Virus record (IMG/VR): IMGVR_UViG_3300042350_004528
Location: 62,001-126,000 of that record
Strand: one strand, 5' to 3'
DNA length: 64,000 bases
In this document: positions 39,264 through 62,309 of the stretch, piece after piece
How positions within the stretch are numbered: position 1 is the stretch's first letter
Layout: the number at the start of each line of letters is the position of its first letter
The notes under the pieces: model-generated
Databases searched by the model: none
Told to the model about the DNA's origin: nothing
Seen by the model: only the letters and a program-made list of their open reading frames with translations
Program-made: the position numbers and the translations under genes

Positions 39264-39935
39264 ATGGATACTTTTTCAATAACAATTGCTTTCTCAACGA
39301 GAAAAATAAATCAAGAGTATGTTGAACATGTTAAAAAATCATGTGCATGCCCAGATTTAGAGTTGTTGGTTTATGAAAACAATGGTGATAAAAGTTTAAC
39401 TGAAATTTATAATGAAGTTTTAAAAACAGCAAAAAATGATATCATTGTTTTCTGTCATGATGATTTAATTTTTGATACACCTTATTGGGGTAGAAAATTA
39501 GTTAAACATTTCAAAAGAAACCCAGATTACGGTATAATTGGAATTGCTGGTACCAACAATTTAATAAATGGTAGGTGGTGGTCGTTAAGGGAATCAATGC
39601 ACGGCATTGTCAATCATACGGATGGTAATAGAAAATGGACAAGTATGTTCTCTCAACCACAAGGCAATAAAATAAAACAAATGGTTATACTTGATGGTTT
39701 GTTTTTTGCTGTTGATAAGACAAAAATTAAACATGGTTTTGATGAGGATTTTAATGGGTTTCATTTTTACGACTTATCATTTTGCATACCAAATCATTTA
39801 GATGGTGTTAAGATTGGTGTTATAACGGATATAATGATCACACACTTATCTGTTGGTATGACAAACCAAAAATGGGAAGATAATAAAAATTTATTGGAAA
39901 AAAAATATGCGGATAAGTTTCCGATGAGAATATGA
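39264..39935 (+). CDS. Glycosyltransferase family 2-like protein
   Basis: IYN...AKNDIIVFCHDD, LDGLFFA, FHFYDLSFC. Confidence 0.8.
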   Translation: MDTFSITIAFSTRKINQEYVEHVKKSCACPDLELLVYENNGDKSLTEIYNEVLKTAKNDIIVFCHDDLIFDTPYWGRKLVKHFKRNPDYGIIGIAGTNNLINGRWWSLRESMHGIVNHTDGNRKWTSMFSQPQGNKIKQMVILDGLFFAVDKTKIKHGFDEDFNGFHFYDLSFCIPNHLDGVKIGVITDIMITHLSVGMTNQKWEDNKNLLEKKYADKFPMRI

Positions 39936-40594
39936 AAAATATTAGTGGTTTAAAAAATATCCATGTGGGTGAAGATATCTACATTTTAGCATCTGGTAAA
40001 TCTGTTGATTTTTTTGATGAAGATTTTTTTGATGGTAAAATACTTATCGGTGTTAACCAAGCGTATAAATTTACTTGGTGTGATTACCTGGTTAGAAAAG
40101 AAGTTAAATTTATTAAACAGAGTATAGAAACAGATTCCGTTGTTATTGTTTCTGAGTACGATAGTGGTAATTTAAATTCTGGTGAACAAAAGTTAAATAC
40201 AAACAAAATTGATCACCCTAATTTATATTATTTTGAACACTTGGATAATCAACATGCAAGGCTTGACACATCTGTTTTTGGTACAGATAAAATTGTCGTT
40301 AGTTTCTCAACTATTACATCAGCCATACACATTGCAGCCTACATGGGCGCTAAAAACATTATTTTAATTGGTCATGATTGTGGTACGATTGATGGCGAAA
40401 TGACGTTTAAAGGGTATTATGATTCCATTAAAGATACACCATGGGTGAGCTGGGATCAGTATAAATCTTGGTTAAAAATAATTGAAGGGCAAACGATAGA
40501 AGTTAAAAAACAAGTAAAAAAACACTATGGTGCTAATGTTGTATCAATGCTACCGTTTGTTTCACTGAACCTAGAAAATCATTTATATTTGTGA
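39932..40594 (+). CDS. DUF115/Maf-like (sialyltransferase-fold) protein
   Basis: GEDIYILASGKS...IGVNQA...STITSAIHIAAYMGAKNIILIGHD. Confidence 0.7.
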   Translation: MKNISGLKNIHVGEDIYILASGKSVDFFDEDFFDGKILIGVNQAYKFTWCDYLVRKEVKFIKQSIETDSVVIVSEYDSGNLNSGEQKLNTNKIDHPNLYYFEHLDNQHARLDTSVFGTDKIVVSFSTITSAIHIAAYMGAKNIILIGHDCGTIDGEMTFKGYYDSIKDTPWVSWDQYKSWLKIIEGQTIEVKKQVKKHYGANVVSMLPFVSLNLENHLYL

Positions 40595-41223
40595 TAAAAT
40601 ACATTATACCAGCAAGACGAAACTCAAAAGGGTTCCCATTTAAAAATAGAAAATTAATAAATTATACGTTAGATAATTTACCAAAAAACGTATATGACGA
40701 TGTTATTTTAACTACCGATGATGAAAAGTTATTGGAAATTGGTTTAGAATATGGTATAAAATGTATTAATAGAAATCCAAGTTTAGCTTTAGATAAAACT
40801 TCAACTAAAGAAGTTATGGATGACCTAAAGTTTCAGGGTATTATTACTAACACAGACATTGTTGTTATGTTATATTTAACATATCCGCAAAGAAATTGGT
40901 TAGATATAACTAACGCTTTACAGTTTTTTGATAATAAAAATGCAAAAAGCCTTTTGTGTAAAAAAGAAATAACAACAACCCACCCATATTTATATTTACT
41001 TGAAGTTGGTGATTTTAAGGGTAAACAATTAATCCCCCACAATCTATACAGAAGGCAAGATTATCCAAAAGTTTTTGAAATATCTCACTTTATATCGATT
41101 TTTAAAGTCAGTGAACTCAAAAATTTAAATAATAATCTTTATAATAACGACACCGTTTTTTATCCAATTGATGATATAATTGATGTTGACACTGATAAAG
41201 ATTTAGAAAGGTTTTTAGAATAA
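40591..41223 (+). CDS. neuA: Acylneuraminate (CMP-nonulosonate) cytidylyltransferase
   Basis: IIPARRNSKGFPFKN, LTTDD, LYLTYPQR, IDVDTDKD; GTG start. Confidence 0.88.
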   Translation: MIKYIIPARRNSKGFPFKNRKLINYTLDNLPKNVYDDVILTTDDEKLLEIGLEYGIKCINRNPSLALDKTSTKEVMDDLKFQGIITNTDIVVMLYLTYPQRNWLDITNALQFFDNKNAKSLLCKKEITTTHPYLYLLEVGDFKGKQLIPHNLYRRQDYPKVFEISHFISIFKVSELKNLNNNLYNNDTVFYPIDDIIDVDTDKDLERFLE

Positions 41224-42374
41224 TGGGTATTTTTATAAAAAATAAAACAAAAAGGGTACAAAAAGATGACACAAAACAACCAGTGTTAACTAATACTGCA
41301 ACTAATAAATCTTTAATAGGTGAAGAGGTTGTCGTTGCTGAAAAAAAAGCAATAAAAAAAGGATTTGGGGATAAAAAAATTGTAAACAAAGAACCAGTAA
41401 AGGCCACAATTAATTCTGTGGCGGTTGGTAAAGAGGAAAAAAAGTCCGTGTTGTTATTTGAAAACAACGAAAAAAATGAACCGACCACAAATTCATTAAT
41501 TAATAAAATTAATAAATCTTCAGGTAGAAATTCAATTTTTGACAAAGTTGTTGCCCCAGAAATTAAAAATTCAAATGTAGCTAAATCAAATGACAAAGTT
41601 GTTAACGACATTTATGATAAAGCTAGAAAAAATATTAGTTTTATAAAAAATAAAAATAATAAGTACTATGATTTTGTTTTCACTAAAGGGTACATAAATG
41701 AAAAAGATATTAAACATGTTAACACTGAACTAGATAAACAATTAAATAATTTAAAAATAAATCCGTCAACAATGGATTTATACTTTTTTAAATCGTTTAT
41801 AAAAGATAAAACAATCGCTCTTATAGCTAACTCGTCTGATTTATTAAATAAAAAACTTGGTGCGGAAATAGATTCTCATGACATTGTAGTTAGATTTAAT
41901 TCATATAAAATATTAAAAGAGGATACTGGGGAAAAATTAACTATACATGTTAGCATTTATTTACAAAATGAAAATTTAAATAATTTTGCACCTATTAGAT
42001 TTATCCTTTCGGGTAATAAAATAAACTGGGCTAAAAAAATATTAACATTAAATAAGTTTAACCAATCTACAATATTAAAGTATAATCACCACTCAACATT
42101 ACCAGGTAATTTTAGAGACGATTCGCCAACCACAACGGGATTCGCCACCTTAATTTTACTACTTAAAATTGGTGGTTTTCAAAAAATTAATATGTTTGGT
42201 TTTGATTTTTATCAAAACGGTAATGATAGTTTATTTAGAACGGACGTTGGTATGGAATCCCCAATATCTACCGTTCATGATTATTTCTTCGAAAAAGAAT
42301 TTATGATGGAATATTCATATGAATATGACGATAAAAAAAATATAATTACTTTTTATGATTATAGCACATTTTAA
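41223..42374 (+). CDS. GT29-like sialyltransferase with a Lys-rich N-terminal extension
   Basis: Sialylmotif L (IALIANS..LL....G.EID.HD.VVRFN), motif S (PTTG...MFGFD) and VS (HxxxxE). Confidence 0.75.
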   Translation: MGIFIKNKTKRVQKDDTKQPVLTNTATNKSLIGEEVVVAEKKAIKKGFGDKKIVNKEPVKATINSVAVGKEEKKSVLLFENNEKNEPTTNSLINKINKSSGRNSIFDKVVAPEIKNSNVAKSNDKVVNDIYDKARKNISFIKNKNNKYYDFVFTKGYINEKDIKHVNTELDKQLNNLKINPSTMDLYFFKSFIKDKTIALIANSSDLLNKKLGAEIDSHDIVVRFNSYKILKEDTGEKLTIHVSIYLQNENLNNFAPIRFILSGNKINWAKKILTLNKFNQSTILKYNHHSTLPGNFRDDSPTTTGFATLILLLKIGGFQKINMFGFDFYQNGNDSLFRTDVGMESPISTVHDYFFEKEFMMEYSYEYDDKKNIITFYDYSTF

Positions 42375-43203
42375 AGAAACGCCAATAGCACATGCACCAG
42401 AAGCGATTAGTGATGTTATAAATAAATATACAGATCATAAATCGTATGTTTTTGGCTACGGTTACCCGAATAAAAAATTAATACCAAAAACCGATATACT
42501 CCATTTACATAATAAGGATAGAAATTATAATTTTAATAAAAAAGTAATACAGTATCATAGTGAACCTTTTAGGGTAACATTGGATGTAAAAACAAAAAAA
42601 TTAGTAATAGCTCAGTACCATGCAACCTTACCAGAATATAATAATTGTACCGTTGTTAGAAACCCAATTGACATTTATGATGTAAAATTTTTACCAAAAT
42701 ACCAAAATAAAAAAATAAGAATTGGTTATTCTCCGTCAACAGTCAGACCACTATCAATTTGGGCAGATAAAGGATATACTGAAACATATCCCATTTTACA
42801 AAAAATAAAATCTAAATACGGAAACTCCGTTGAAATTGATATAATTGTAAATGTTTCATTAGACGAATGTTTAAAAAGAAAATCTCTATGTAATATTTTT
42901 ATTGATGAAGTAAAAACAATATCATATCATAGATCTGGGTTAGAATCGTTATCAATGGGTATTCCAACAATATGTTCAATTGGCCCATCCGTTGAAAAAC
43001 TTTTATTAAATTCTTCTGGTGCGCCAAATAGCCCGTTTATTAATGTAAATCATAATCAGTTAGAAAAAAAACTAATTGAATTAATAAATTTGGGGGTGGG
43101 TAATTTGTTGGAAATTGGTTACAATAATAGACTTTGGATGGAAAAATATTGGTCACCAGATACTATCGCAAACGAATATATTGAAATATATAAAAAAATA
43201 TAA
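42355..43203 (+). CDS. Glycosyltransferase, GT-B-like
   Basis: IRIGYSPST...KG...IFIDE...GLESLSMGIP. Confidence 0.7.
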   Translation: MIIAHFKETPIAHAPEAISDVINKYTDHKSYVFGYGYPNKKLIPKTDILHLHNKDRNYNFNKKVIQYHSEPFRVTLDVKTKKLVIAQYHATLPEYNNCTVVRNPIDIYDVKFLPKYQNKKIRIGYSPSTVRPLSIWADKGYTETYPILQKIKSKYGNSVEIDIIVNVSLDECLKRKSLCNIFIDEVKTISYHRSGLESLSMGIPTICSIGPSVEKLLLNSSGAPNSPFINVNHNQLEKKLIELINLGVGNLLEIGYNNRLWMEKYWSPDTIANEYIEIYKKI

Positions 43204-43204
43204 A

Positions 43205-43876
43205 ATGAAAAAATATTCAATTATAATACCAACGATGTGGATGTCTAGTCATTTATTTAAAATGTTAGACTTTTATGAGGAAAATGAATTAATACAAGAG
43301 GTTATAATTATAGATAATGCGCCAGAAAAGGGGCAACCAATACCAAAACAATTAAGTAAGTTAAAACTACATACTAAGGGTAAAAACATATATGTTAACC
43401 CAGCCTGGAATTTTGGTGTTTCATTAGCAATTAGTGATTATATTATAATTGCTAATGATGATATATTATTTAATAAAAAAGATTTTGATGAGTTACTAAA
43501 TAAGTCTTTTGAGTTTTTAAACGAAAACACCATAATTGGCCCATCAATGTATTGTTTTAAACAAAATCCCGAGAATTATAGTTTGCGATATAATGGTTTA
43601 AAAATCGAAAAGCTTAATGTAGGATTTACTTATGGTTTTGGTACATTTATGATAATGAAAAAAAACTCTTATACAATAATACCAGATGATATTTTAATAT
43701 TTCATGGAGACGTCATTCAACACAGAACAAATGATGTGTTTTTATTTAGTGGTATTGAGATAGATACACCGATGAGCGTAACACTTAAAAGTGATCCACA
43801 AATACATAATTTAGCTAAATTAGACCACGCCAAATCATTAAAGTATGATGTCAAAAAATTAATTAAATTTAAATAA
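43205..43876 (+). CDS. Glycosyltransferase family 2
   Basis: YSIIIPT, IIIDN, NPAWNFG, IANDD; start moved to ATG 43205. Confidence 0.8.
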   Translation: MKKYSIIIPTMWMSSHLFKMLDFYEENELIQEVIIIDNAPEKGQPIPKQLSKLKLHTKGKNIYVNPAWNFGVSLAISDYIIIANDDILFNKKDFDELLNKSFEFLNENTIIGPSMYCFKQNPENYSLRYNGLKIEKLNVGFTYGFGTFMIMKKNSYTIIPDDILIFHGDVIQHRTNDVFLFSGIEIDTPMSVTLKSDPQIHNLAKLDHAKSLKYDVKKLIKFK

Positions 43877-44521
43877 ATGGCTAACGGAATTTACAAAATA
43901 ACAGAAGAATTTGAAAAAGCGTTAAGTGATTACACAGGCGCACCATATGTTGTTACATTAGATAACCAATCAAACGGTTTATTTTTATCATTATACTACG
44001 AAAATAATATTAAAAAAAGTATAACAACCCCAAAAATTACAATACCATCAAGAACATACCCATCGGTACCGTGTGAAATAATACACGCGGGCTTAAAAGT
44101 TGATTTTTATCCTATTGAGGGGACAAAATTAAAAGGCGCTTATGAATTAAAGGGTAGTAATGTCTGGGATTCCGCTTTAAGGTTTACCGCAAATATGTAT
44201 TTACCATCAACACATATGTGCATATCTTTTACGGGCCCATATAAACATTTTAAATTAAGTAAAGGAGGTGCTATTTTAACTGATAGCCATGAAGCTTATT
44301 TATGGTTTAAGAGGGCTAGATATAGTGGTAGGAGGGAATGCTCTTATCATGACGATCATTTTGATATGTTGGGTTGGAATTTTTATATGATGCCAGAATT
44401 AGCGGCACGTGGGTTGTTGTTAATGAATCAATTTTACAACATCGATGGCACAAAAAAAGAAAACGCGGATTTAGAATTACCATATCCAGATTTATCAAAG
44501 TTTGATATTTATAAACAATGA
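43877..44521 (+). CDS. DegT/DnrJ/EryC1/StrS-type sugar aminotransferase (short form)
   Basis: FEKALSDYTGAPY...SNGLFL, WDSA, SFTGPYKH...GGAIL, GWNFYM; only 214 aa. Confidence 0.8.
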   Translation: MANGIYKITEEFEKALSDYTGAPYVVTLDNQSNGLFLSLYYENNIKKSITTPKITIPSRTYPSVPCEIIHAGLKVDFYPIEGTKLKGAYELKGSNVWDSALRFTANMYLPSTHMCISFTGPYKHFKLSKGGAILTDSHEAYLWFKRARYSGRRECSYHDDHFDMLGWNFYMMPELAARGLLLMNQFYNIDGTKKENADLELPYPDLSKFDIYKQ

Positions 44522-45240
44522 AACACATAATTGTCTTTTTGGCTTATGAAAATTTTGATATTATTAAAAAATCATTTAATTCGTTAAAAAATTGCGATTC
44601 GGATTTTTTTATTATTGAAAATAACTCTAAAAATTCAAATATCATAAAAGAATTTTTTATAAATGAAAATTTAGTCGGGTATATTCAATTTATAGAAAAT
44701 GCTGCGGCAAATGCTGTAAATATTTTTATTAAAAAATATTATAACTTATTATCCCAATATGATTATGTGACAATAACTGATGGTGATTTATTTCTATATG
44801 ACGCAACAGAAACATTTGGTGAAATAATTTCATCGTTTAATCATAATAATTGTTATGTTTGTGGCGTTGCCTTATATAAAGGTAATTATTATGAAAATAC
44901 AACCAATAGAATTATTGGTACCGAATATTATATTGAACATATGTTAAGTAAGTCGGAACATAAATTAGAGGCAATAAAAGGTAGAACAGGTAATCATTTA
45001 TTGACCTTTAATAAAGAAAGTCTACACGTTATTAAAGACATCCATTATATTGATTCAAATATTTTTAAAAAAATAAAAGAGCTGGGTGGATCTTGTTATA
45101 GAACAACAAAAAATTTGGCCTATCATTTAACTTGGGATGTATATTTTGATGGTAATCCATATTATGAGAATAAAAAAAATAATTTAAAAGAAATCTGGTC
45201 ACAATCTGATTTTGATTTTAAATATAATGTTATTATATGA
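44518..45240 (+). CDS. Putative GT-A fold glycosyltransferase
   Basis: IIENNS, YVTITDGD, HLTWD; glycan-island context. Confidence 0.5.
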   Translation: MKHIIVFLAYENFDIIKKSFNSLKNCDSDFFIIENNSKNSNIIKEFFINENLVGYIQFIENAAANAVNIFIKKYYNLLSQYDYVTITDGDLFLYDATETFGEIISSFNHNNCYVCGVALYKGNYYENTTNRIIGTEYYIEHMLSKSEHKLEAIKGRTGNHLLTFNKESLHVIKDIHYIDSNIFKKIKELGGSCYRTTKNLAYHLTWDVYFDGNPYYENKKNNLKEIWSQSDFDFKYNVII

Positions 45241-45824
45241 AAAGAGCATTAATTGGTGCTGGTGGTTTTGCACGTGAAATTAAATCGCATATTGGTGATG
45301 AATCAATGATATGTTTTGTTGATGATAGTTACTATGTTGGTGATACCTATACGTTACCATTAAGTCACTTTAATCCAAATGAATATGAGGTATTGATTGC
45401 TATCGGAGACCCACGTGCAAGATATGAGATAAGTAATCGCTTACCTAAAGATACTAAATATTTTACGCATATTGATAAACGAGCAAATATATTAGATGAA
45501 AATATTGAAATTGGCGAGGGTAGTATTATTTGTGCTGGCTGCATATTAACAACAAATATTAAAATAGGTAAACATGCCCATTTAAATTTACAAACAACAA
45601 TCGGGCATGATACAACCATAGGTAACTTTTTTACAACAGCCCCTGGAGCAAAAATATCTGGTAATTGTGTAATACACGATTTAGTTTACATTGGGACAAA
45701 CGCTTCTGTTAGAGAAAAAATAACGATCCATAGCTTAACAACAATAGGTTTAAATGCTGGTGTGGTAAAAGATATAACTGAACCAGGTGTTTACGGCGGA
45801 ACGCCATGTAAAAAAATTAAATAA
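45237..45824 (+). CDS. NeuD/PglD-family sugar acetyltransferase (hexapeptide repeats)
   Basis: LIGAGGFARE, AIGDP..R, left-handed beta-helix repeats, YGGTP. Confidence 0.9.
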   Translation: MKRALIGAGGFAREIKSHIGDESMICFVDDSYYVGDTYTLPLSHFNPNEYEVLIAIGDPRARYEISNRLPKDTKYFTHIDKRANILDENIEIGEGSIICAGCILTTNIKIGKHAHLNLQTTIGHDTTIGNFFTTAPGAKISGNCVIHDLVYIGTNASVREKITIHSLTTIGLNAGVVKDITEPGVYGGTPCKKIK

Positions 45825-45825
45825 T

Positions 45826-46440
45826 ATGCAAAATACAGTAGAATCTTTAAATTTAATTAAAAAAATATCAGATGAGATTAATAATATGACATTTCATCAC
45901 CATTATTATGTTTTATATGATATAGCTAAAGAATTTGGAACCTCACCAATTAACTATGTTGAAATCGGTTGTTATGCTGGGGGCTCCGCTTGTCTTATGC
46001 TACAAAGGCCAAATACTAACGTAATTAGTATTGATTTAGGTGTACCAATTAAACCAGAAGTAGTTAAAAATAATGTAAAAAAATTAAATATTTTAAATAA
46101 CAATTACAATTATATACAAGGTAACTCACAAAAAAATGAAACGGTTAGTGAGTTAAAAAAATTGGTTGAATTGATAGATATTTTATTTATTGACGGTGAC
46201 CATAGTTATAATGGTGTTATTAACGATTTTAATTTGTATTCTAAAATGGTAAAACCAGGTGGTTATATTATTTTTGATGATTATAACGACAAACAACATA
46301 GCCCTCAAGTTAAAGTAGCTGTTGACGACTTATTAAAAAATAACTATGAGTATGAAATATTTGGTACATTACCAAATATTTTTGGCGCTAGGCCTAGTGA
46401 ATTAAAAGAGGGTAATTGTTTTATAATTAAAAAAAAATAA
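45826..46440 (+). CDS. Class I SAM-dependent methyltransferase (likely glycan O-methyltransferase)
   Basis: YVEIGCYAGGS, LFIDGDHSY, GGYIIFDDY; start moved to ATG 45826. Confidence 0.85.
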   Translation: MQNTVESLNLIKKISDEINNMTFHHHYYVLYDIAKEFGTSPINYVEIGCYAGGSACLMLQRPNTNVISIDLGVPIKPEVVKNNVKKLNILNNNYNYIQGNSQKNETVSELKKLVELIDILFIDGDHSYNGVINDFNLYSKMVKPGGYIIFDDYNDKQHSPQVKVAVDDLLKNNYEYEIFGTLPNIFGARPSELKEGNCFIIKKK

Positions 46441-46441
46441 T

Positions 46442-47122
46442 ATGTTAGCAATTGTCATATCCACGTATCAAAGAAATGATGGTACAACACCCATTCATTT
46501 AACCAAAGCATTAACTTCGATTAAAAATCAAACATACCAAAATTATATGGTATTTTTAATTGGCGATCGCTATGATAATAATGATGAGTTTATAAGATTA
46601 GCGACATCAATAATTGATTCTGATAAAATGGTGTTTGTTAATTTACCAAATGCTGTTGAAAGAGAAAAATATCCGTTTGGTGATGTACGTCTGTGGTCAT
46701 CTGGCGGCGTAAATGCAGTTAATTTCGGTATTAAACTTGCTTTGGAACAAAATTATAATTATATTTGTAGACTAGATCACGATGACTGGTGGGCGCCAGA
46801 ACATTTGGATTTAATAAAAGATAAATTAAACGAAGATCATATAATAATAGCAACGAAAGGTATGCATTTCACTGATAAAATATTACCTGTAAAAGATAGT
46901 AACCCATTCTACCCTAAAAGTTCAGATTTATTACATTCGTCTGTTTGTATAAATTTTAAAAAAACTCCGTTAAGGTATCGCGATGTTTTTGCCGAAGAAG
47001 GTAGACCTTATGCGGCTGATGCTGATTTATGGGATAGATTGTCTTATTATATGGTAAAAAACAATAAAACAGGTTATTTAATAAACAAGGTAACGTGTTA
47101 TCATAGTAATGAAAGAAGATGA
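46442..47122 (+). CDS. Glycosyltransferase family 2
   Basis: IVISTYQR, SIKNQTY, RLDHDDWW. Confidence 0.85.
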   Translation: MLAIVISTYQRNDGTTPIHLTKALTSIKNQTYQNYMVFLIGDRYDNNDEFIRLATSIIDSDKMVFVNLPNAVEREKYPFGDVRLWSSGGVNAVNFGIKLALEQNYNYICRLDHDDWWAPEHLDLIKDKLNEDHIIIATKGMHFTDKILPVKDSNPFYPKSSDLLHSSVCINFKKTPLRYRDVFAEEGRPYAADADLWDRLSYYMVKNNKTGYLINKVTCYHSNERR

Positions 47123-47126
47123 CTAA

Positions 47127-47972
47127 ATGAAAAAGGTAAAAATAATAGCGGAAATAGGGATTAATCACAATGGCGATATTGAAATTGCCAAACAATTAAT
47201 TATGGTGGCGAAAGCGGCTGGATGTGATTACGTAAAATTTCAGAAGAGAAACCCAGATGTGTGTGTTCCAGAAGACCAAAAAAATAAAATTCGCCAAACG
47301 CCATGGGGTGAAATGACATATCTGGAATACAAATGGAGAACTGAATTTAATTATGAACAATACTCTGAAATTGATGAGTTTTGCAAACAAATCGGTATAA
47401 AATGGTTTGTGTCTGTTTGGGACAAAGATAGCGTAGAGTTTATGGATATCTTTAGAAGATTAGGTAAAGCCTACGATGGTACAATGAAAATACCATCAGC
47501 GTTGATTACGGACTTAGAACTTTGTAAATACGCAAGAGCCAATTGTGATAAATTAATTATTTCAACTGGAATGAGTACTGAAAAAGAGGTTAGAGCCTGT
47601 ATTAGTACCTGCAATCCAGATGTTGTTATGCACACAAACTCAACTTACCCATGTCCTGTTGAAGAATTAAATTTGAATTACATAAATTGGCTTAAAAGTT
47701 GGTACCCAGGCTTAGATATAGGATATAGTGGTCACGAGTATGGTTTAGTTACAACATTTGCAACAATACCTATGGGTGTCACTTGGATTGAAAGACATAT
47801 CACCTTGGATAGAAATATGTGGGGTTCCGATCACTCAGCTTCAATAGAACCATCTGGTTTATTCAAGCTAGTTAAAGGTATACGTGACATTGAGTCATCT
47901 TTAAGTATCCCAATGAAACCTAGAGAAGTTTTTGGCGGGGAATTAGCTAAACAAAAAAGCTTGAGGAAATAA
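47127..47972 (+). CDS. neuB: Nonulosonic acid synthase (NeuB/PseI/LegI/Kdn-9-P synthase family); lacks the C-terminal AFP-like domain
   Basis: IIAEIGINHNGD, VKFQ, IISTGM, MHTNSTYP, GYSGHE, IERHITLD...GSDH. Confidence 0.95.
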   Translation: MKKVKIIAEIGINHNGDIEIAKQLIMVAKAAGCDYVKFQKRNPDVCVPEDQKNKIRQTPWGEMTYLEYKWRTEFNYEQYSEIDEFCKQIGIKWFVSVWDKDSVEFMDIFRRLGKAYDGTMKIPSALITDLELCKYARANCDKLIISTGMSTEKEVRACISTCNPDVVMHTNSTYPCPVEELNLNYINWLKSWYPGLDIGYSGHEYGLVTTFATIPMGVTWIERHITLDRNMWGSDHSASIEPSGLFKLVKGIRDIESSLSIPMKPREVFGGELAKQKSLRK

Positions 47973-48298
47973 TGAACATTTACGTAGACGTAGATAACAC
48001 AATAACCGAAACTTCTGGTATGGATTATCAGAATGCTAAACCTATATACGCGAAAATCTCAATCATAAATAAATTATACGATTTAGGCCATACAATTACT
48101 TATTGGACAGCTAGGGGTTCCATTTCAGGTATTGACTATTATTCACTCACGAAATTACAACTAGATTCGTGGGGTGTAAAATATCACAATTTCATGGTTG
48201 GAAAACCAGCTTTTGATCTTTTAATTGATGATAAAACAATAAACAACATTAATGAAAACCTTTTTACATGGGCAACCAAAGAAGAAGAAAAAAACTAA
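47972..48298 (+). CDS. Capless HAD phosphatase (capsule-biosynthesis type)
   Basis: YVDVDNT (DxD), WTARG, GKP, LIDDK. Confidence 0.8.
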   Translation: MNIYVDVDNTITETSGMDYQNAKPIYAKISIINKLYDLGHTITYWTARGSISGIDYYSLTKLQLDSWGVKYHNFMVGKPAFDLLIDDKTINNINENLFTWATKEEEKN

Positions 48299-56542: not shown

Positions 56543-58108
56543 ATGGGAATTTACCGCACATATTTTGACAAGAATAATACGATAGTAAAAGATTCTTTAG
56601 TTAATACAGGCAGAAACCAGGTTTCTGAGCTATACTTTGGTGATAAAGTAAGTAGATTTTTATTTTACTGTTCATTTGATGAGATAAAAAAGAAAGTTGA
56701 AAACAAAGAAATTATCATCAATAATGATGTTAAACATTATTTAAGAATAAAAAATACATCAAATTTTGATGTGTCACCTTTTTTATCCGATAGTAACAAT
56801 CTAGTTTTTACGGATAAATATAGATCCTCTTCATTTGATTTAGAATTAAAACCAGTTAAAGAATTTTGGGATGAGGGTATGGGGTATGATTTCCAACTTA
56901 GCCCATTTTCGAGACCCCAAGACCGCGATTTTAATGAAGAACCGTCAAACTGGTTTAATGGTACCTATGTTAATGAATTTTTAACACCTGGTGTTACATT
57001 AGGTAATAGATTAGCCCTACAACATTTCGATAGGGGTAATGAGGATGTTTTAATGGACATCACTGATTTCGTTAATGATGTGATAACTACTGGGACAACA
57101 ACAGGTATAACAACTGGAATCACAACAGGTATAACAACTGGGATTACTACGGGCATCACCACTGGAATCACAACTGGGGTTACCAGCGGGATTACCACTG
57201 GAATCACAACAGGTATAACAACTGGGATTACCACTGGAATCACAACAGGTATAACAACTGGTATTACTACGGGAGTAACAAGTAGTTACAATGGTTTTTG
57301 TTTAAAATACACAGACCCGTATGAATCTTTGGTTTTTGATGATTCTAGAGCGTATGTTTTAGGGTTATTTACAAAATACACACAAACATTTTTTGAACCG
57401 TTTATTGAAACACACTACAATGATCATATTGTCGATGATAGAGTTGATTTCTTTTTAAATAAATTAAATAGATTGTATCTTTATGTTAATATTGACGGAA
57501 AACTGACTAACTTGGATGAATTACCAACATTTACAATAAATGGGGTTGTAACAATAAACCCATTTATAGTTAAACAACAAACAAAGGGTGTTTATTACGT
57601 TGAATTTTTCGCATCAAGTGAGGTGTATGACTCTTATACTGAATATAAAGATGTTTGGTCTAACATAAAAATTAATGGTGTTAACAGACCAGATATAAGA
57701 TTACGCTTCGTGCCAAAAGAAGACAACGATTACTACCAACTCGGTTCTGATGTCTCGGAACCAATTAGATATGGGATATCAGTTAGCGGTATTAAAAGAG
57801 AAGAAAAGGTTAATCAAGGTGAAAAAAGACGTGTCAACGTTCACCTCAGAAAGCCATATACAGTTGAACAACAAGATGTAAAAACAAATGTATATTACAA
57901 ATTGTATATTAAACAAGGGCCAAATGTTATTGATATACTTGATTGGCAACCAGTTAACAAACTATATAATTCGAATACCTTTAATATCGATACAACCTGG
58001 TTGGTGCCACAAGTATATTACGTTGACATTAAAGTCGAAAGAAATGATGAAATTAATGTCTATAACGAAGAATTAAAATTCACTGTATTAAGTAAATTAA
58101 AAGGATAA
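56543..58108 (+). CDS. Structural protein with a (I/V)TTG x17 repeat and a C-terminal Ig-like region
   Basis: 521-aa ORF after the spike gene; beta-rich flanks. Confidence 0.7.
   Translation: MGIYRTYFDKNNTIVKDSLVNTGRNQVSELYFGDKVSRFLFYCSFDEIKKKVENKEIIINNDVKHYLRIKNTSNFDVSPFLSDSNNLVFTDKYRSSSFDLELKPVKEFWDEGMGYDFQLSPFSRPQDRDFNEEPSNWFNGTYVNEFLTPGVTLGNRLALQHFDRGNEDVLMDITDFVNDVITTGTTTGITTGITTGITTGITTGITTGITTGVTSGITTGITTGITTGITTGITTGITTGITTGVTSSYNGFCLKYTDPYESLVFDDSRAYVLGLFTKYTQTFFEPFIETHYNDHIVDDRVDFFLNKLNRLYLYVNIDGKLTNLDELPTFTINGVVTINPFIVKQQTKGVYYVEFFASSEVYDSYTEYKDVWSNIKINGVNRPDIRLRFVPKEDNDYYQLGSDVSEPIRYGISVSGIKREEKVNQGEKRRVNVHLRKPYTVEQQDVKTNVYYKLYIKQGPNVIDILDWQPVNKLYNSNTFNIDTTWLVPQVYYVDIKVERNDEINVYNEELKFTVLSKLKG
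57083..57286 (+). repeat. 12-bp coding tandem repeat, 17 units (ITTG/TTTG/VTSG/VTSS)
   Basis: Read directly; wobble positions vary between units. Confidence 0.97.
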
Positions 58109-60524: not shown

Positions 60525-62309
60525 GTGAATATAACAGATAAAAGACAACTACTATTAGAGTACACAAAATGTGCTAAAGACCCTTCTTATGCAATTGAAA
60601 GTTATTTTGAAACTTTTGATAAAACACAAGAGGGTTTTGTGCCATTTAAATTATTTGACAAACAAAAGTTATTAATTAGTAATTACGAAACTAATCGATT
60701 TAATTTAGTTTTAAAATATAGACAAGCTGGTATATCAACGGTAACTGCGGCATACGCTGCGGTAAAAACAGCTTTTGCTATTTCAGATAACCCAGAGAGG
60801 GTGCTTATTCTAGCGAACAAACAAGAAACTGCCGTTGAATTCTTAAATAAGATAACAGGTTTTATCAAACAATTACCTGATTGGACTAACATTACATTCG
60901 ATAAAGCATCCCAAAAACATGTTAAACTATCAAATGGGTCAGAATTAAAGGCAGTTGCAACATCTACGGATGCGTTACGTGGTTATACACCAACAATAAT
61001 GATTCTGGACGAAGCTGCGTTTATTGAGGGTGGCCAAGCTCTTTGGTCAGCGTGTTTAGCTGCGATAGGTACTGGTGGTAAGGCGTTTTTAATATCCACA
61101 CCAAATGGTTTGGATGAAATCTACTATGAGGCGTATGAGGGTGCTATAAGTGGAACTAATAAATTTAAAGTAACACATTTAAAGTGGTGGCAAGATCCCC
61201 GTTTTAATAAAGATCTTTGTCTAATTAAAACAAACGACATTATAAATTGGATTCAAAAACCAGAAGCGGAAAAAGACGAGCATATTATTGAAAGCGCCGT
61301 TGCTTTACATTATGATATTATTATAAAGTTCATAGAAGAGGGTTATAAACCACATTCAACATGGTATGAGAATATGTGCCGTGATATGAACTTAAATAAG
61401 CGAATGATTAACCAAGAATTGGAGTGCGCTTTTATTGGTTCTGGTGACAACGTTATTGAGGGTGAGGTGGTAAGAAGACAAGAAGAGACCAACGTTATGG
61501 AACCATCATTCAAAGATAGAGAATGGGATAATAATGTTTGGGTTTGGAAAATGCCACAAAAAGGTCATAGATATATTTTAGCGTTGGATGTATCTCGTGG
61601 TGATTCCGAAGATGCGACTGGTATGTGTATTATTGACTACGATACATATGAACAGGTTTTAGAGTATCATGGAAAGGTTCCACCTGACATTGCGGCTCAA
61701 CTTGTTGATCATTACGGTAGAATGTATAATGCATTATCAACTTTTGATATAACTGGTGGTATGGGAATTGCTGCAACATCTAAGTTAAAGGAAATGAACT
61801 ACCCAAAATCATTACTACATTATGATAATCTAAACGATGATGCTTTTTATATACCACCACCAGATGCGGTACCTGGAATTAATTTTGCATCAAAAAACAG
61901 AAGAAGTCAAATCGTTGCCGCATTAGAGGAAGCGGTATCTAGAGGTGATTTTAAAATACGAAGTGAAAGATTGATAGCCGAACTTAAGAAGTTTATATAC
62001 AAAAACGGAAAACCAGACCATATGAAAGGATCTCACGATGATCTTATTATGGCTTTGGGTATGTGTTTATTCGTGGCTAACACATCATTTAAAAAGCTAC
62101 AAGAGTCTGATAGTATGACAAAGGCTATGTTGGATAGTTGGAGAACAAATATTAATACAACTTCAACAAAAAGTAGCTATTTATTAGAAGATACAATAAA
62201 ATCAGTACCAGATGAAGGTAGAGTCTACAATAAAAGAGAAGTAAATGACAATATTTTACAAAATACACGTGACTTTTCCTGGCTTTTTGGTAATATTAAT
62301 AAAAGATAG
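60525..62309 (+). CDS. terL: Terminase large subunit (T4 gp17-like)
   Basis: LVLKYRQAGIST (Walker A), IMILDEAAF (Walker B), ISTPNG, RNase H-like LALDVSRG and HDDLIMA; GTG start. Confidence 0.95.
   Translation: MNITDKRQLLLEYTKCAKDPSYAIESYFETFDKTQEGFVPFKLFDKQKLLISNYETNRFNLVLKYRQAGISTVTAAYAAVKTAFAISDNPERVLILANKQETAVEFLNKITGFIKQLPDWTNITFDKASQKHVKLSNGSELKAVATSTDALRGYTPTIMILDEAAFIEGGQALWSACLAAIGTGGKAFLISTPNGLDEIYYEAYEGAISGTNKFKVTHLKWWQDPRFNKDLCLIKTNDIINWIQKPEAEKDEHIIESAVALHYDIIIKFIEEGYKPHSTWYENMCRDMNLNKRMINQELECAFIGSGDNVIEGEVVRRQEETNVMEPSFKDREWDNNVWVWKMPQKGHRYILALDVSRGDSEDATGMCIIDYDTYEQVLEYHGKVPPDIAAQLVDHYGRMYNALSTFDITGGMGIAATSKLKEMNYPKSLLHYDNLNDDAFYIPPPDAVPGINFASKNRRSQIVAALEEAVSRGDFKIRSERLIAELKKFIYKNGKPDHMKGSHDDLIMALGMCLFVANTSFKKLQESDSMTKAMLDSWRTNINTTSTKSSYLLEDTIKSVPDEGRVYNKREVNDNILQNTRDFSWLFGNINKR

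What the first reader, a model, noticed from the sequence alone, without database searches (positions are those of the whole stretch)
39932..40594. Maf/DUF115-like gene directly upstream of neuA points to protein O-nonulosonylation
Seen: DUF115-type motifs in an ORF overlapping neuA by 4 nt. Known: Maf proteins containing this domain attach Pse/Leg directly to Ser/Thr of flagellins in the cytoplasm. Inference: by analogy to flagellin, a phage Maf-like enzyme could modify Ser/Thr-rich virion proteins during assembly.
Basis: partly seen in the sequence, partly recalled or inferred. Interest (0 to 1): 0.6.

Follow-up and report, generated by a model that had tools for sequence, protein, structure and literature searches.

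The report
Phage minimal Maf-like sialic-acid transferase
A 299-kb jumbo phage carries a small, almost virus-only enzyme related to the bacterial proteins that put sialic-acid-like sugars on flagella; it lies inside a gene set that makes and activates such a sugar, so the phage probably coats something, likely its own particle, with it, but whether the sugar goes straight onto protein is unproven.

Summary
ORF 39932-40594 (220 aa) has a DUF115/MptE-like domain (Pfam 28.7 bits, below the 34.6 cut-off). Profile alignment to real Maf central domains gives 94 % probability, and the AlphaFold model matches Maf at Z 12.7. The ORF overlaps the GT2 gene upstream (ATGA) and the CMP-sugar synthetase gene downstream (GTGA) by 4 nt each.

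It is not a Maf by architecture. It is the catalytic domain alone, whereas 72 of 72 sampled Campylobacteria matches lie in frames of 566 aa or more. The invariant Maf histidine has no counterpart. Fold alone cannot separate Maf, MptE kinase and CstII.

Context supports a nonulosonate transferase. NeuB, a small HAD phosphatase and the cytidylyltransferase travel with the family in jumbo phages and giant-virus-like contigs.

The family is mostly viral: 251 IMG/VR loci, none in 50,697 GenBank phage records with three queries, and 2 of 401 Pseudomonadota genomes.

New support for a virion target: in 35 HK97-type phage contigs the homologue sits between the major capsid gene and the head-tail connector gene. 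Five near-complete genomes of that clade have no NeuB or cytidylyltransferase gene.

The acceptor is unresolved, because GT partners and a GT1 fusion fit glycan extension equally well.

The parts
39932..40594 (+). P0001, 220 aa: single-domain Maf/MptE/CstII-fold protein, proposed CMP-nonulosonate transferase. Family-invariant residues: D15, G22-x-S24, N42 (GVNQ), R55-K56, H103, N106, S126-T127-x-T129, H133, D149 (with nearly invariant G147 and H148: the GHD motif), Y162, W180, E185.
39264..39935 (+). P0003, GT2_5-type GT-A glycosyltransferase. Overlaps P0001 by 4 nt (ATGA). Directly upstream of the P0001 homologue in 15 related jumbo-phage loci.
40591..41223 (+). P0002, acylneuraminate-type cytidylyltransferase (CMP-nonulosonate synthetase; subtype not resolved). 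GTG start, 4-nt overlap with P0001.
41223..42374 (+). P0004: Lys-rich N-terminus of about 190 aa plus a GT29-type sialyltransferase-like domain. An accessory second candidate nonulosonate transferase, present in only 7 related loci.
47127..47972 (+). NeuB-family nonulosonate synthase, 281 aa, without the usual C-terminal domain. NeuB_NnaB scores 202 bits against PseI 149 bits.
47972..48298 (+). P0127, 108-aa HAD-type phosphatase (DVDNT motif; EcbF/BcbF capsule phosphatase-like). Found in 29 related loci, and directly upstream of the P0001 homologue in distant phages.
45237..45824 (+). NeuD/PglD-type sugar N-acetyltransferase (157.8 bits, cut-off 160.8).
43877..44521 (+). Short (214 aa) DegT-type aminotransferase-like ORF. 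The same short form occurs in L096.
45787..46440 (+). Methyltransf_24 / TylF-like sugar O-methyltransferase.
43205..43876 (+). GT2 glycosyltransferase. The likely ATG start is at 43205; the mechanical ORF starts at TTG 43115.
46442..47122 (+). GT2 glycosyltransferase.
56543..58108 (+). 521-aa protein with about 16 tandem G-I-T-T units, no family match.

Best explanation
P0001 is the transfer enzyme of a virus-encoded sialic-acid-like (nonulosonate) glycosylation module. Inferred pathway: the NeuB-type synthase condenses phosphoenolpyruvate with a hexosamine or hexose (phosphate). The small HAD phosphatase removes the phosphate. The cytidylyltransferase, translationally coupled to P0001, makes the CMP-sugar. 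P0001, a soluble catalytic-domain-only member of the Maf/MptE/CstII fold group, then moves the sugar from CMP to an acceptor in the infected cell's cytoplasm. I take the acceptor to be a virion component: a structural protein, or a short glycan already placed on one by the neighbouring GT2. I do not take it to be host lipopolysaccharide or DNA. Shown here: the domain, the fold, the gene couplings, the family's viral distribution and its three genomic contexts. Inferred: donor identity, catalysis, and the acceptor.
For: Domain and fold:
- PF01973 E 1.4e-6.
- hhalign to the Maf central domain: 94 %, 182 columns.
- Model pLDDT 91.8.
- Structural matches: Maf Z 12.7, Cst-I Z 9.9, GT29 sialyltransferases Z 8-9; CstII is the Foldseek top hit at E 4e-5.

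Linkage to nonulosonate genes:
- 4-nt overlaps with the GT2_5 gene and the cytidylyltransferase gene.
- Among 93 loci with the homologue, NeuB lies within 10 kb in 36, the cytidylyltransferase in 33 and the HAD phosphatase in 29. In distant phages the phosphatase gene starts about 295 nt upstream, i.e. directly adjacent.
- The same association appears in a 560-kb contig and a giant-virus-like contig.
- In L060 the homologue is the only clear transferase-like gene in a 10-kb sugar-tailoring cluster.

Virion target:
- In 35 HK97-type contigs the order portal - capsid - homologue - GT-A-like gene - connector is kept down to 39 % capsid identity.
- That clade is monophyletic, support 99/95.
- Five of its genomes, 93-100 % complete, have no NeuB or cytidylyltransferase gene.

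Conservation: 34 invariant columns across 45-95 % identity.
Against: - No member of the family has been studied. No homologue was found in GenBank phage records.
- The Pfam score is below the family cut-off.
- The catalytic base cannot be assigned. The invariant Maf His falls in an alignment gap, and the CstII catalytic His aligns with an invariant Trp.
- MptE, a kinase, matches the fold as well as Maf does: Z 12.4 against 12.7.
- In this jumbo phage the gene is not in the head module. It lies among replication and metabolic genes.
- Gene position is only circumstantial evidence for the acceptor.
- The complex prediction gave no verdict.
Confidence: 0.55

Rival explanations
1. One reading: P0001 works exactly like a Maf and links the nonulosonate directly to Ser/Thr hydroxyls of virion proteins, such as the ITTG-repeat protein or the 5316-aa Gly-Ser/Thr collagen-like fibre. 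Neighbouring glycosyltransferases either extend from that sugar or act elsewhere.
For: - Per the Maf papers read here, the glycosyltransferases with this domain that have been studied, the Mafs, act directly on flagellin Ser/Thr (PMC11339370; 10.1101/2023.12.03.569772).
- By profile P0001 is closer to Maf than to GT42: 94 % over 182 columns against 79 % over 81 columns.
- L060 has a sugar-tailoring cluster with this gene as the only clear transferase.
- The capsid-adjacent clade exists.
- Ser/Thr-rich structural candidates occur in this genome and in four relatives.
Against: - P0001 lacks the N- and C-terminal Maf domains, and no GlfM-like partner is evident. In Mafs those elements bind the acceptor (10.1101/2023.12.03.569772).
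- 72 of 72 sampled Campylobacteria PF01973 matches lie in open frames of 566 aa or more, mostly 566-714.
- The invariant Maf His is not conserved.
- The gene is always paired with, or fused to, another glycosyltransferase in the window, in the capsid clade and in L076.
- The co-occurrence with collagen-like ORFs has no control set.
Confidence: 0.3
2. P0001 is a CstII-like glycan sialyltransferase that caps a host-made, lipid-linked glycan (lipooligosaccharide, O-antigen or capsule). This would change the infected cell's surface, for example to stop progeny or competing phages from adsorbing, and would not modify the virion.
For: - Foldseek ranks CstII/Cst-I first.
- PHROG 4603 is named alpha-2,3-sialyltransferase.
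- The window holds at least 7 further glycosyltransferase-like genes.
- A GT1 fusion and a tandem copy occur in L076.
- The distant bacterial relative in Pacificispira lies in a polysaccharide cluster with an ABC transporter.
Against: - No PF06002 (GT42) hit at E <= 1.
- The conserved position between the capsid and connector genes in 35 phage contigs is hard to explain for a host-surface enzyme.
- No flippase, polymerase or lipid-carrier initiating transferase was seen in the window.
Confidence: 0.15
3. P0001 is not a glycosyltransferase. It would be an MptE / thiamin-pyrophosphokinase-type pyrophosphokinase, or a non-catalytic SteA-like protein, acting on a small molecule or a nucleotide.
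For: - MptE (8sd5) ties with Maf in structural score: Z 12.4 with the lowest rmsd, 2.9 A. SteA scores 9.8 and thiamin pyrophosphokinases 6-8.
- No sialyltransferase catalytic His can be mapped.
- dUTPase and HD-domain genes lie nearby.
Against: - Where MptE has the acidic run PDIIVSDLDGD, P0001 has CDYLVRKE, which follows the Maf pattern PDfvvslE.
- No pterin or thiamin genes are present.
- The linkage to NeuB and the cytidylyltransferase recurs across divergent viruses.
- The capsid-module position argues against it.
Confidence: 0.08

Closest known systems
Maf (motility accessory factor) flagellin nonulosonate O-glycosyltransferases, e.g. Magnetospirillum Maf (PDB 5mu5), C. botulinum CbMaf, Shewanella Maf-1/Maf-2
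   Same: Same catalytic-domain family (PF01973). Profile-profile match over the whole domain. Shared G-x-S, D-[FY]-x-V-x-x-E, S/T and G-x-D motifs. Cytoplasmic and soluble. Encoded next to CMP-nonulosonate synthesis genes.
   Different: One third of the length. No N-terminal Rossmann-like domain, and no C-terminal helical or TPR acceptor-binding domain. No GlfM-like partner. The invariant Maf His is absent, while a family-specific G-H-D motif is present. No flagellin or flagellar genes. Found in viruses.
GT42 sialyltransferases CstII / Cst-I of Campylobacter jejuni
   Same: Best Foldseek matches (E 4e-5, TM 0.54). Similar size (about 290 aa against 220 aa) and single-domain build. Shared '(S/T)-T/S-G ... 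G-x-D' core. They use CMP-sugars.
   Different: No PF06002 hit. The profile match covers only 81 columns. The catalytic His188 position is occupied by an invariant Trp in the low-confidence alignment. The lid/acceptor region is not conserved.
MptE, archaeal 6-hydroxymethyl-7,8-dihydropterin pyrophosphokinase (PDB 8sd5)
   Same: Same Pfam family name and the same fold (Z 12.4, rmsd 2.9 A), and a similar length.
   Different: The acidic DLDGD run of the kinase is replaced. The context is nonulosonate synthesis, not pterin synthesis. Viral, not archaeal.
Mycobacteriophage virion glycosylation (Freeman et al. 2023, as cited in PMC12619734)
   Same: Phage-encoded glycosyltransferases that glycosylate virion proteins (per PMC12619734: glycans at the C-termini of capsid and tail tube subunits).
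   Different: From my own knowledge, unchecked here: those enzymes are ordinary GT-A/GT2 types using NDP-hexoses and are encoded beside the structural genes. No nonulosonate and no Maf-like domain have been reported there.

Membership tests
Maf flagellin glycosyltransferases | Central MAF_flag10 / DUF115 (PF01973) GT-A-like domain | tested here: met
   PF01973 28.7 bits, below the 34.6 cut-off. hhalign to 18 Mafs: 94.2 %, E 1.1e-7, 182 columns. 5mu5 residues 261-507: Z 12.7.
Maf flagellin glycosyltransferases | Three-domain protein of about 570-730 aa, with flanking N-terminal and C-terminal (helical/TPR) domains or a GlfM partner that bind the acceptor | tested here: not met
   P0001 is 220 aa and the model is one domain. 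All 72 PF01973 matches in 41 Campylobacteria genomes lie in open frames of 566 aa or more, mostly 566-714, and score 84-162 bits. The neighbours are enzymes, not a four-helix-bundle partner.
Maf flagellin glycosyltransferases | Invariant residues of the Maf alignment: G-P-S, D285, S355, G-x-D-L, H387 | tested here: inconclusive
   G22-x-S24, D51, S126 and G147-x-D149 align. H387 falls in a 15-column gap of the family.
Maf flagellin glycosylation | Encoded in a flagellar or flagellin-glycosylation locus, with flagellin as acceptor | tested here: not met
   Phage genome. The neighbours are glycosyltransferases, sugar-nucleotide enzymes, dUTPase and PhoH.
Maf flagellin glycosyltransferases | Linked to CMP-nonulosonate biosynthesis genes | tested here: met
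Maf flagellin glycosyltransferases | Transfers the nonulosonate directly to protein Ser/Thr | not testable with these tools
   Needs co-expression and mass spectrometry.
GT42 (CstII/Cst-I, PF06002) | Match to the family model, and the catalytic His188 with phosphate-binding Tyr residues | tested here: not met
   No PF06002 hit at E <= 1. hhalign 79 % over 81 columns, with the His position aligned to W180. The fold is similar.
MptE pyrophosphokinase | Fold plus the acidic Mg/pyrophosphoryl-transfer motifs, and a pterin-pathway context | tested here: inconclusive
   Fold met: Z 12.4. The acidic run seen in 8sd5 is not matched, judged by indirect alignment through the Maf profile. No pterin genes. 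No archaeal MptE alignment could be built.

The most novel reading that the evidence does not exclude
Tailed phages and giant viruses use a virus-specific, stripped-down Maf-like enzyme to put sialic-acid-like sugars directly on their own structural proteins. In small HK97 phages the target would be capsid proteins, using host CMP-sugars. In jumbo phages it would be very long Gly-Ser/Thr collagen-like fibres. That would be the first protein O-nonulosonylation known outside flagella, and the first nonulosonate-coated virions.
Probability: 0.25. Interest if true: 0.8.

Novelty: new variant of a known kind. Interest (0 to 1): 0.58.

Why it matters
Nonulosonates on flagella, capsules and lipopolysaccharide shape motility, immune recognition and phage adsorption. 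Virions carrying them have not been described.

This family is an uncharacterised, mostly viral, catalytic-domain-only branch of the Maf/CstII fold. It would give a minimal enzyme for studying how nonulosonate transferases work, since their catalytic residues are still poorly defined.

It also gives a concrete test of whether environmental phages glycosylate their particles. The capsid-adjacent clade offers a simple three-gene system (capsid, transferase, GT-A-like gene) that could be rebuilt in E. coli.

If the acceptor proves to be a glycan, the enzyme is still a new small sialyltransferase type of possible use in glyco-engineering.

Tried and rejected
- PDB sequence searches with P0001 and with the family profile found nothing meaningful; the best hits were ankyrin-repeat noise.
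- tblastn of three family members against 50,697 GenBank phage records found no match.
- Complex prediction of the L036 capsid protein (residues 300-596) with its neighbouring homologue gave no verdict. It is not evidence either way.
- I folded the 298-aa partner of the capsid clade (P0128) from a single sequence by mistake. pLDDT was 31, so the model is unusable. Its profile has no Pfam hit. Its best PDB hit is the STIV A197 viral GT-A at E 0.097 only. PHROG hits are weak. 'GT-A-like' therefore rests on the N-terminal beta-strand, the E-H-D motif and these weak hits.
- hhalign of that partner against the window's GT2_5 family showed no relation. The two 'transferase + GT' pairs are analogous, not a shared cassette.
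- I recalled that the Tannerella forsythia nonulosonate transferases were Maf-like. On reading, they are GT-B/TagB-like (PMC5420450), so I dropped that comparison.
- The 'atlas' fold library was unavailable.
- I could not build an archaeal MptE alignment because no archaeal genome handle was available, so a direct profile comparison with MptE is missing.
- I did not use the large representative-protein search.
- The DNA-modification idea (dUTPase and HD genes nearby) was set aside because of the capsid-module clade and the CMP-sugar linkage.

Full report
**What is there**

The window is bases 62001-126000 of a 298,833-bp IMG/VR virus record that CheckV rates 100 % complete. GC content is about 30 %. 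The record has a T4-type gp23 capsid gene just beyond the window, a large terminase at 60525-62309, a family-B polymerase and PhoH. It is therefore a jumbo tailed phage.

ORF 39932-40594 encodes 220 aa (P0001). It overlaps the GT2_5 glycosyltransferase gene upstream by ATGA and the cytidylyltransferase gene downstream by GTGA. These genes belong to a run of tightly packed or overlapping genes, 39264-43876, within a sugar cluster of about 16 kb. The cluster contains:
- CTP-transferase-like, cupin and GT4-like genes;
- GT2_5, P0001 and the cytidylyltransferase;
- a GT29-like gene and a GT2;
- a short DegT-like gene, a NeuD-like acetyltransferase, a methyltransferase and a second GT2;
- NeuB and a HAD phosphatase;
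- GT1-like and GT2 genes.

**Is the DUF115 signal real?**

Pfam gives only PF01973, at 28.7 bits against a cut-off of 34.6. PHROGs gives family 4603, 'alpha-2,3-sialyltransferase'.

The word search found 461 relatives of about 220 aa. A 34-member alignment (A1) has 34 invariant columns.

I fetched genuine Mafs and GT42 enzymes from bacterial genomes. The Maf set matches the solved Maf 5mu5 at E 1e-36, so it is a true Maf alignment. Results of hhalign:

| Target profile | Probability | E-value | Columns | Region of P0001 |
|---|---|---|---|---|
| Maf central domain | 94.2 % | 1.1e-7 | 182 | residues 4-202 (whole domain) |
| GT42 (CstII family) | 79 % | 1.6e-5 | 81 | residues 126-209 |

The AlphaFold2 model is confident (pLDDT 91.8). 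Structural matches from VIA-align:

| Match | Z |
|---|---|
| Maf 5mu5 | 12.7 |
| MptE 8sd5 | 12.4 |
| Cst-I | 9.9 |
| SteA | 9.8 |
| Animal GT29 sialyltransferases | 8-9 |
| Thiamin pyrophosphokinases | 6-8 |

Foldseek instead ranks CstII first, at E 4e-5.

**Not a Maf by architecture**

In 41 Campylobacteria genomes, all 72 PF01973 matches lie in open frames of 566 aa or more, mostly 566-714 aa, and score 84-162 bits. Mafs have flanking domains, and acceptor recognition lies in a C-terminal TPR domain or in the partner GlfM (PMC11339370; 10.1101/2023.12.03.569772). P0001 is the catalytic domain alone.

Of the Maf invariants, the G-x-S, D, S and G-x-D positions align. The invariant His387 falls in a gap. 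In the GT42 alignment, the catalytic His aligns with the invariant W180. The family has its own G-H-D motif and an invariant E185. The catalytic base is therefore unassigned.

Against the kinase reading: where MptE has PDIIVSDLDGD, P0001 has CDYLVRKE, which follows the Maf pattern. This comparison is indirect.

**What the relatives show**

The family is mostly viral:
- 251 confirmed loci in IMG/VR.
- 14 loci in 185,579 species genomes; 13 are MAG contigs, the weakest match is in an isolate genome, and several are short.
- 2 of 401 Pseudomonadota genomes, one of which is the search centre.
- No match in GenBank phage records.
- The nearest Atlas clusters are 92-100 % viral.
- BFVD holds many small uncharacterised look-alikes from uncultured phages and giant viruses.

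Three genomic contexts recur.

(i) Nonulosonate modules:
- GT2_5 - homologue - cytidylyltransferase in 15 jumbo-phage loci.
- NeuB in 36 loci and the HAD phosphatase in 29. In distant phages the phosphatase gene is directly upstream.
- The same association in a 560-kb contig and a giant-virus-like contig.
- In L060, a 10-kb sugar-tailoring cluster in which the homologue is the only clear transferase.

(ii) A monophyletic clade (support 99/95) of 35 HK97-type contigs:
- The order portal - capsid - homologue - 298-aa GT-A-like gene - head-tail connector holds down to 39 % capsid identity.
- Five near-complete genomes of the clade have no NeuB or cytidylyltransferase gene, so they would need a host CMP-sugar.

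(iii) A GT1 fusion followed by a second copy of the homologue, in L076-L080.

**Mechanism**

The recurrent linkage makes a CMP-nonulosonate transferase the best reading, at about 0.65 summed over the acceptor variants. The capsid-module clade favours a virion target.

Whether the sugar goes directly onto Ser/Thr is open.
- For direct linkage: every studied enzyme with this domain does that, and L060 has no other transferase.
- Against: the acceptor-binding domains are missing, and the gene is always paired with or fused to another glycosyltransferase.

The pairing itself is ambiguous. From my own knowledge (unchecked here), Aeromonas flagellin glycans are linked through the nonulosonate and then extended.

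Candidate acceptors exist. One is the ITTG-repeat protein at 56543-58108. The other is a 5316-aa Gly-X-Y ORF with Ser/Thr in the X and Y positions, near the structural genes. Similar long repeat ORFs occur in four relatives, but no control set was examined.

**Donor**

The NeuB gene scores higher for the Neu5Ac type than for the Pse type. A NeuD-like acetyltransferase and a HAD phosphatase are present. No 4,6-dehydratase or NeuC gene was seen in the window. This leans towards a Neu5Ac- or Kdn-like sugar made through a phosphorylated intermediate, but the sugar type is unresolved.

**Verdict**

P0001 belongs to a new, virus-centred, minimal variant of the Maf/CstII-fold nonulosonate transferases. 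No step of this analysis needed referral.

Noticed in passing
outside the window: genome 139607-155557 (-), = L134:608-16558: 5316-aa ORF, about 50 % Ser/Thr, made of roughly 4700 residues of Gly-X-Y triplets (GTS/GSS/GES), collagen-like. It lies near the gp23-type capsid gene. Relatives G159-G162 carry similar long repeat ORFs (561-2555 aa; one, 2048 aa, lies at a contig end).
   Followed up: partly
window 41223-42374: GT29-type (animal/viral-type) sialyltransferase-like domain (PF00777, 38.7 bits) behind a Lys-rich, probably disordered N-terminus of about 190 aa. This is a second candidate nonulosonate transferase, found in only 7 related loci.
   Followed up: partly
L036:8182-12107, and 34 further loci (L020-L064, L071, L085): In small HK97-type phages (GC 44-59 %), the P0001 homologue and a 298-aa GT-A-like gene lie between the major capsid gene and the head-tail connector gene. 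Five genomes of the clade, 93-100 % complete, have no NeuB or cytidylyltransferase gene.
   Followed up: yes
L076:5608-11360: A 779-aa glycosyltransferase ORF interrupted by an intein (PF14890), followed two genes downstream (after an unannotated 280-aa ORF) by a 623-aa GT1 + MptE-like fusion, and then a second stand-alone MptE-like ORF.
   Followed up: no
window 47972-48298: A 108-aa HAD phosphatase (DVDNT motif) directly after NeuB. In distant phages it lies directly upstream of the P0001 homologue. This suggests a phosphorylated nonulosonate intermediate, as in the Kdn / Neu5Ac-9-P routes.
   Followed up: partly
window 56543-58108: 521-aa protein with about 16 tandem G-I-T-T units in its middle. 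No Pfam or PHROG family. It lies about 2.4 kb (three ORFs) upstream of the large terminase gene.
   Followed up: no
window 3-20524 (-): A block of very large minus-strand ORFs (953+, 2485, 932 and 1030 aa) that was not analysed. GC skew changes sign near 24 kb.
   Followed up: no
genome 131281-132609 and 179875-180681 (outside the window): A T4-type gp23 capsid gene and a class II aminoacyl-tRNA-synthetase-like gene. Together with PhoH, several glycosyltransferases and the size of about 300 kb, this fits the 'moraphage' lineage of aquatic jumbo phages (PMC12619734). No phylogeny was done.
   Followed up: partly
L133:8001-8753 (Pacificispira chromosome): A distant bacterial relative (250 aa, 23 % identity) lies in a polysaccharide-type cluster with a GT2, a BNR_2 sialidase-like gene, methyltransferases and an ABC transporter.
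   Followed up: partly
window 43877-45240: The DegT-like ORF is only 214 aa (the full-length DegT-family ORF in L060 is 344 aa) and is followed by an unannotated 240-aa ORF. The same short form occurs in L096, so it is probably not a sequencing break.
   Followed up: no
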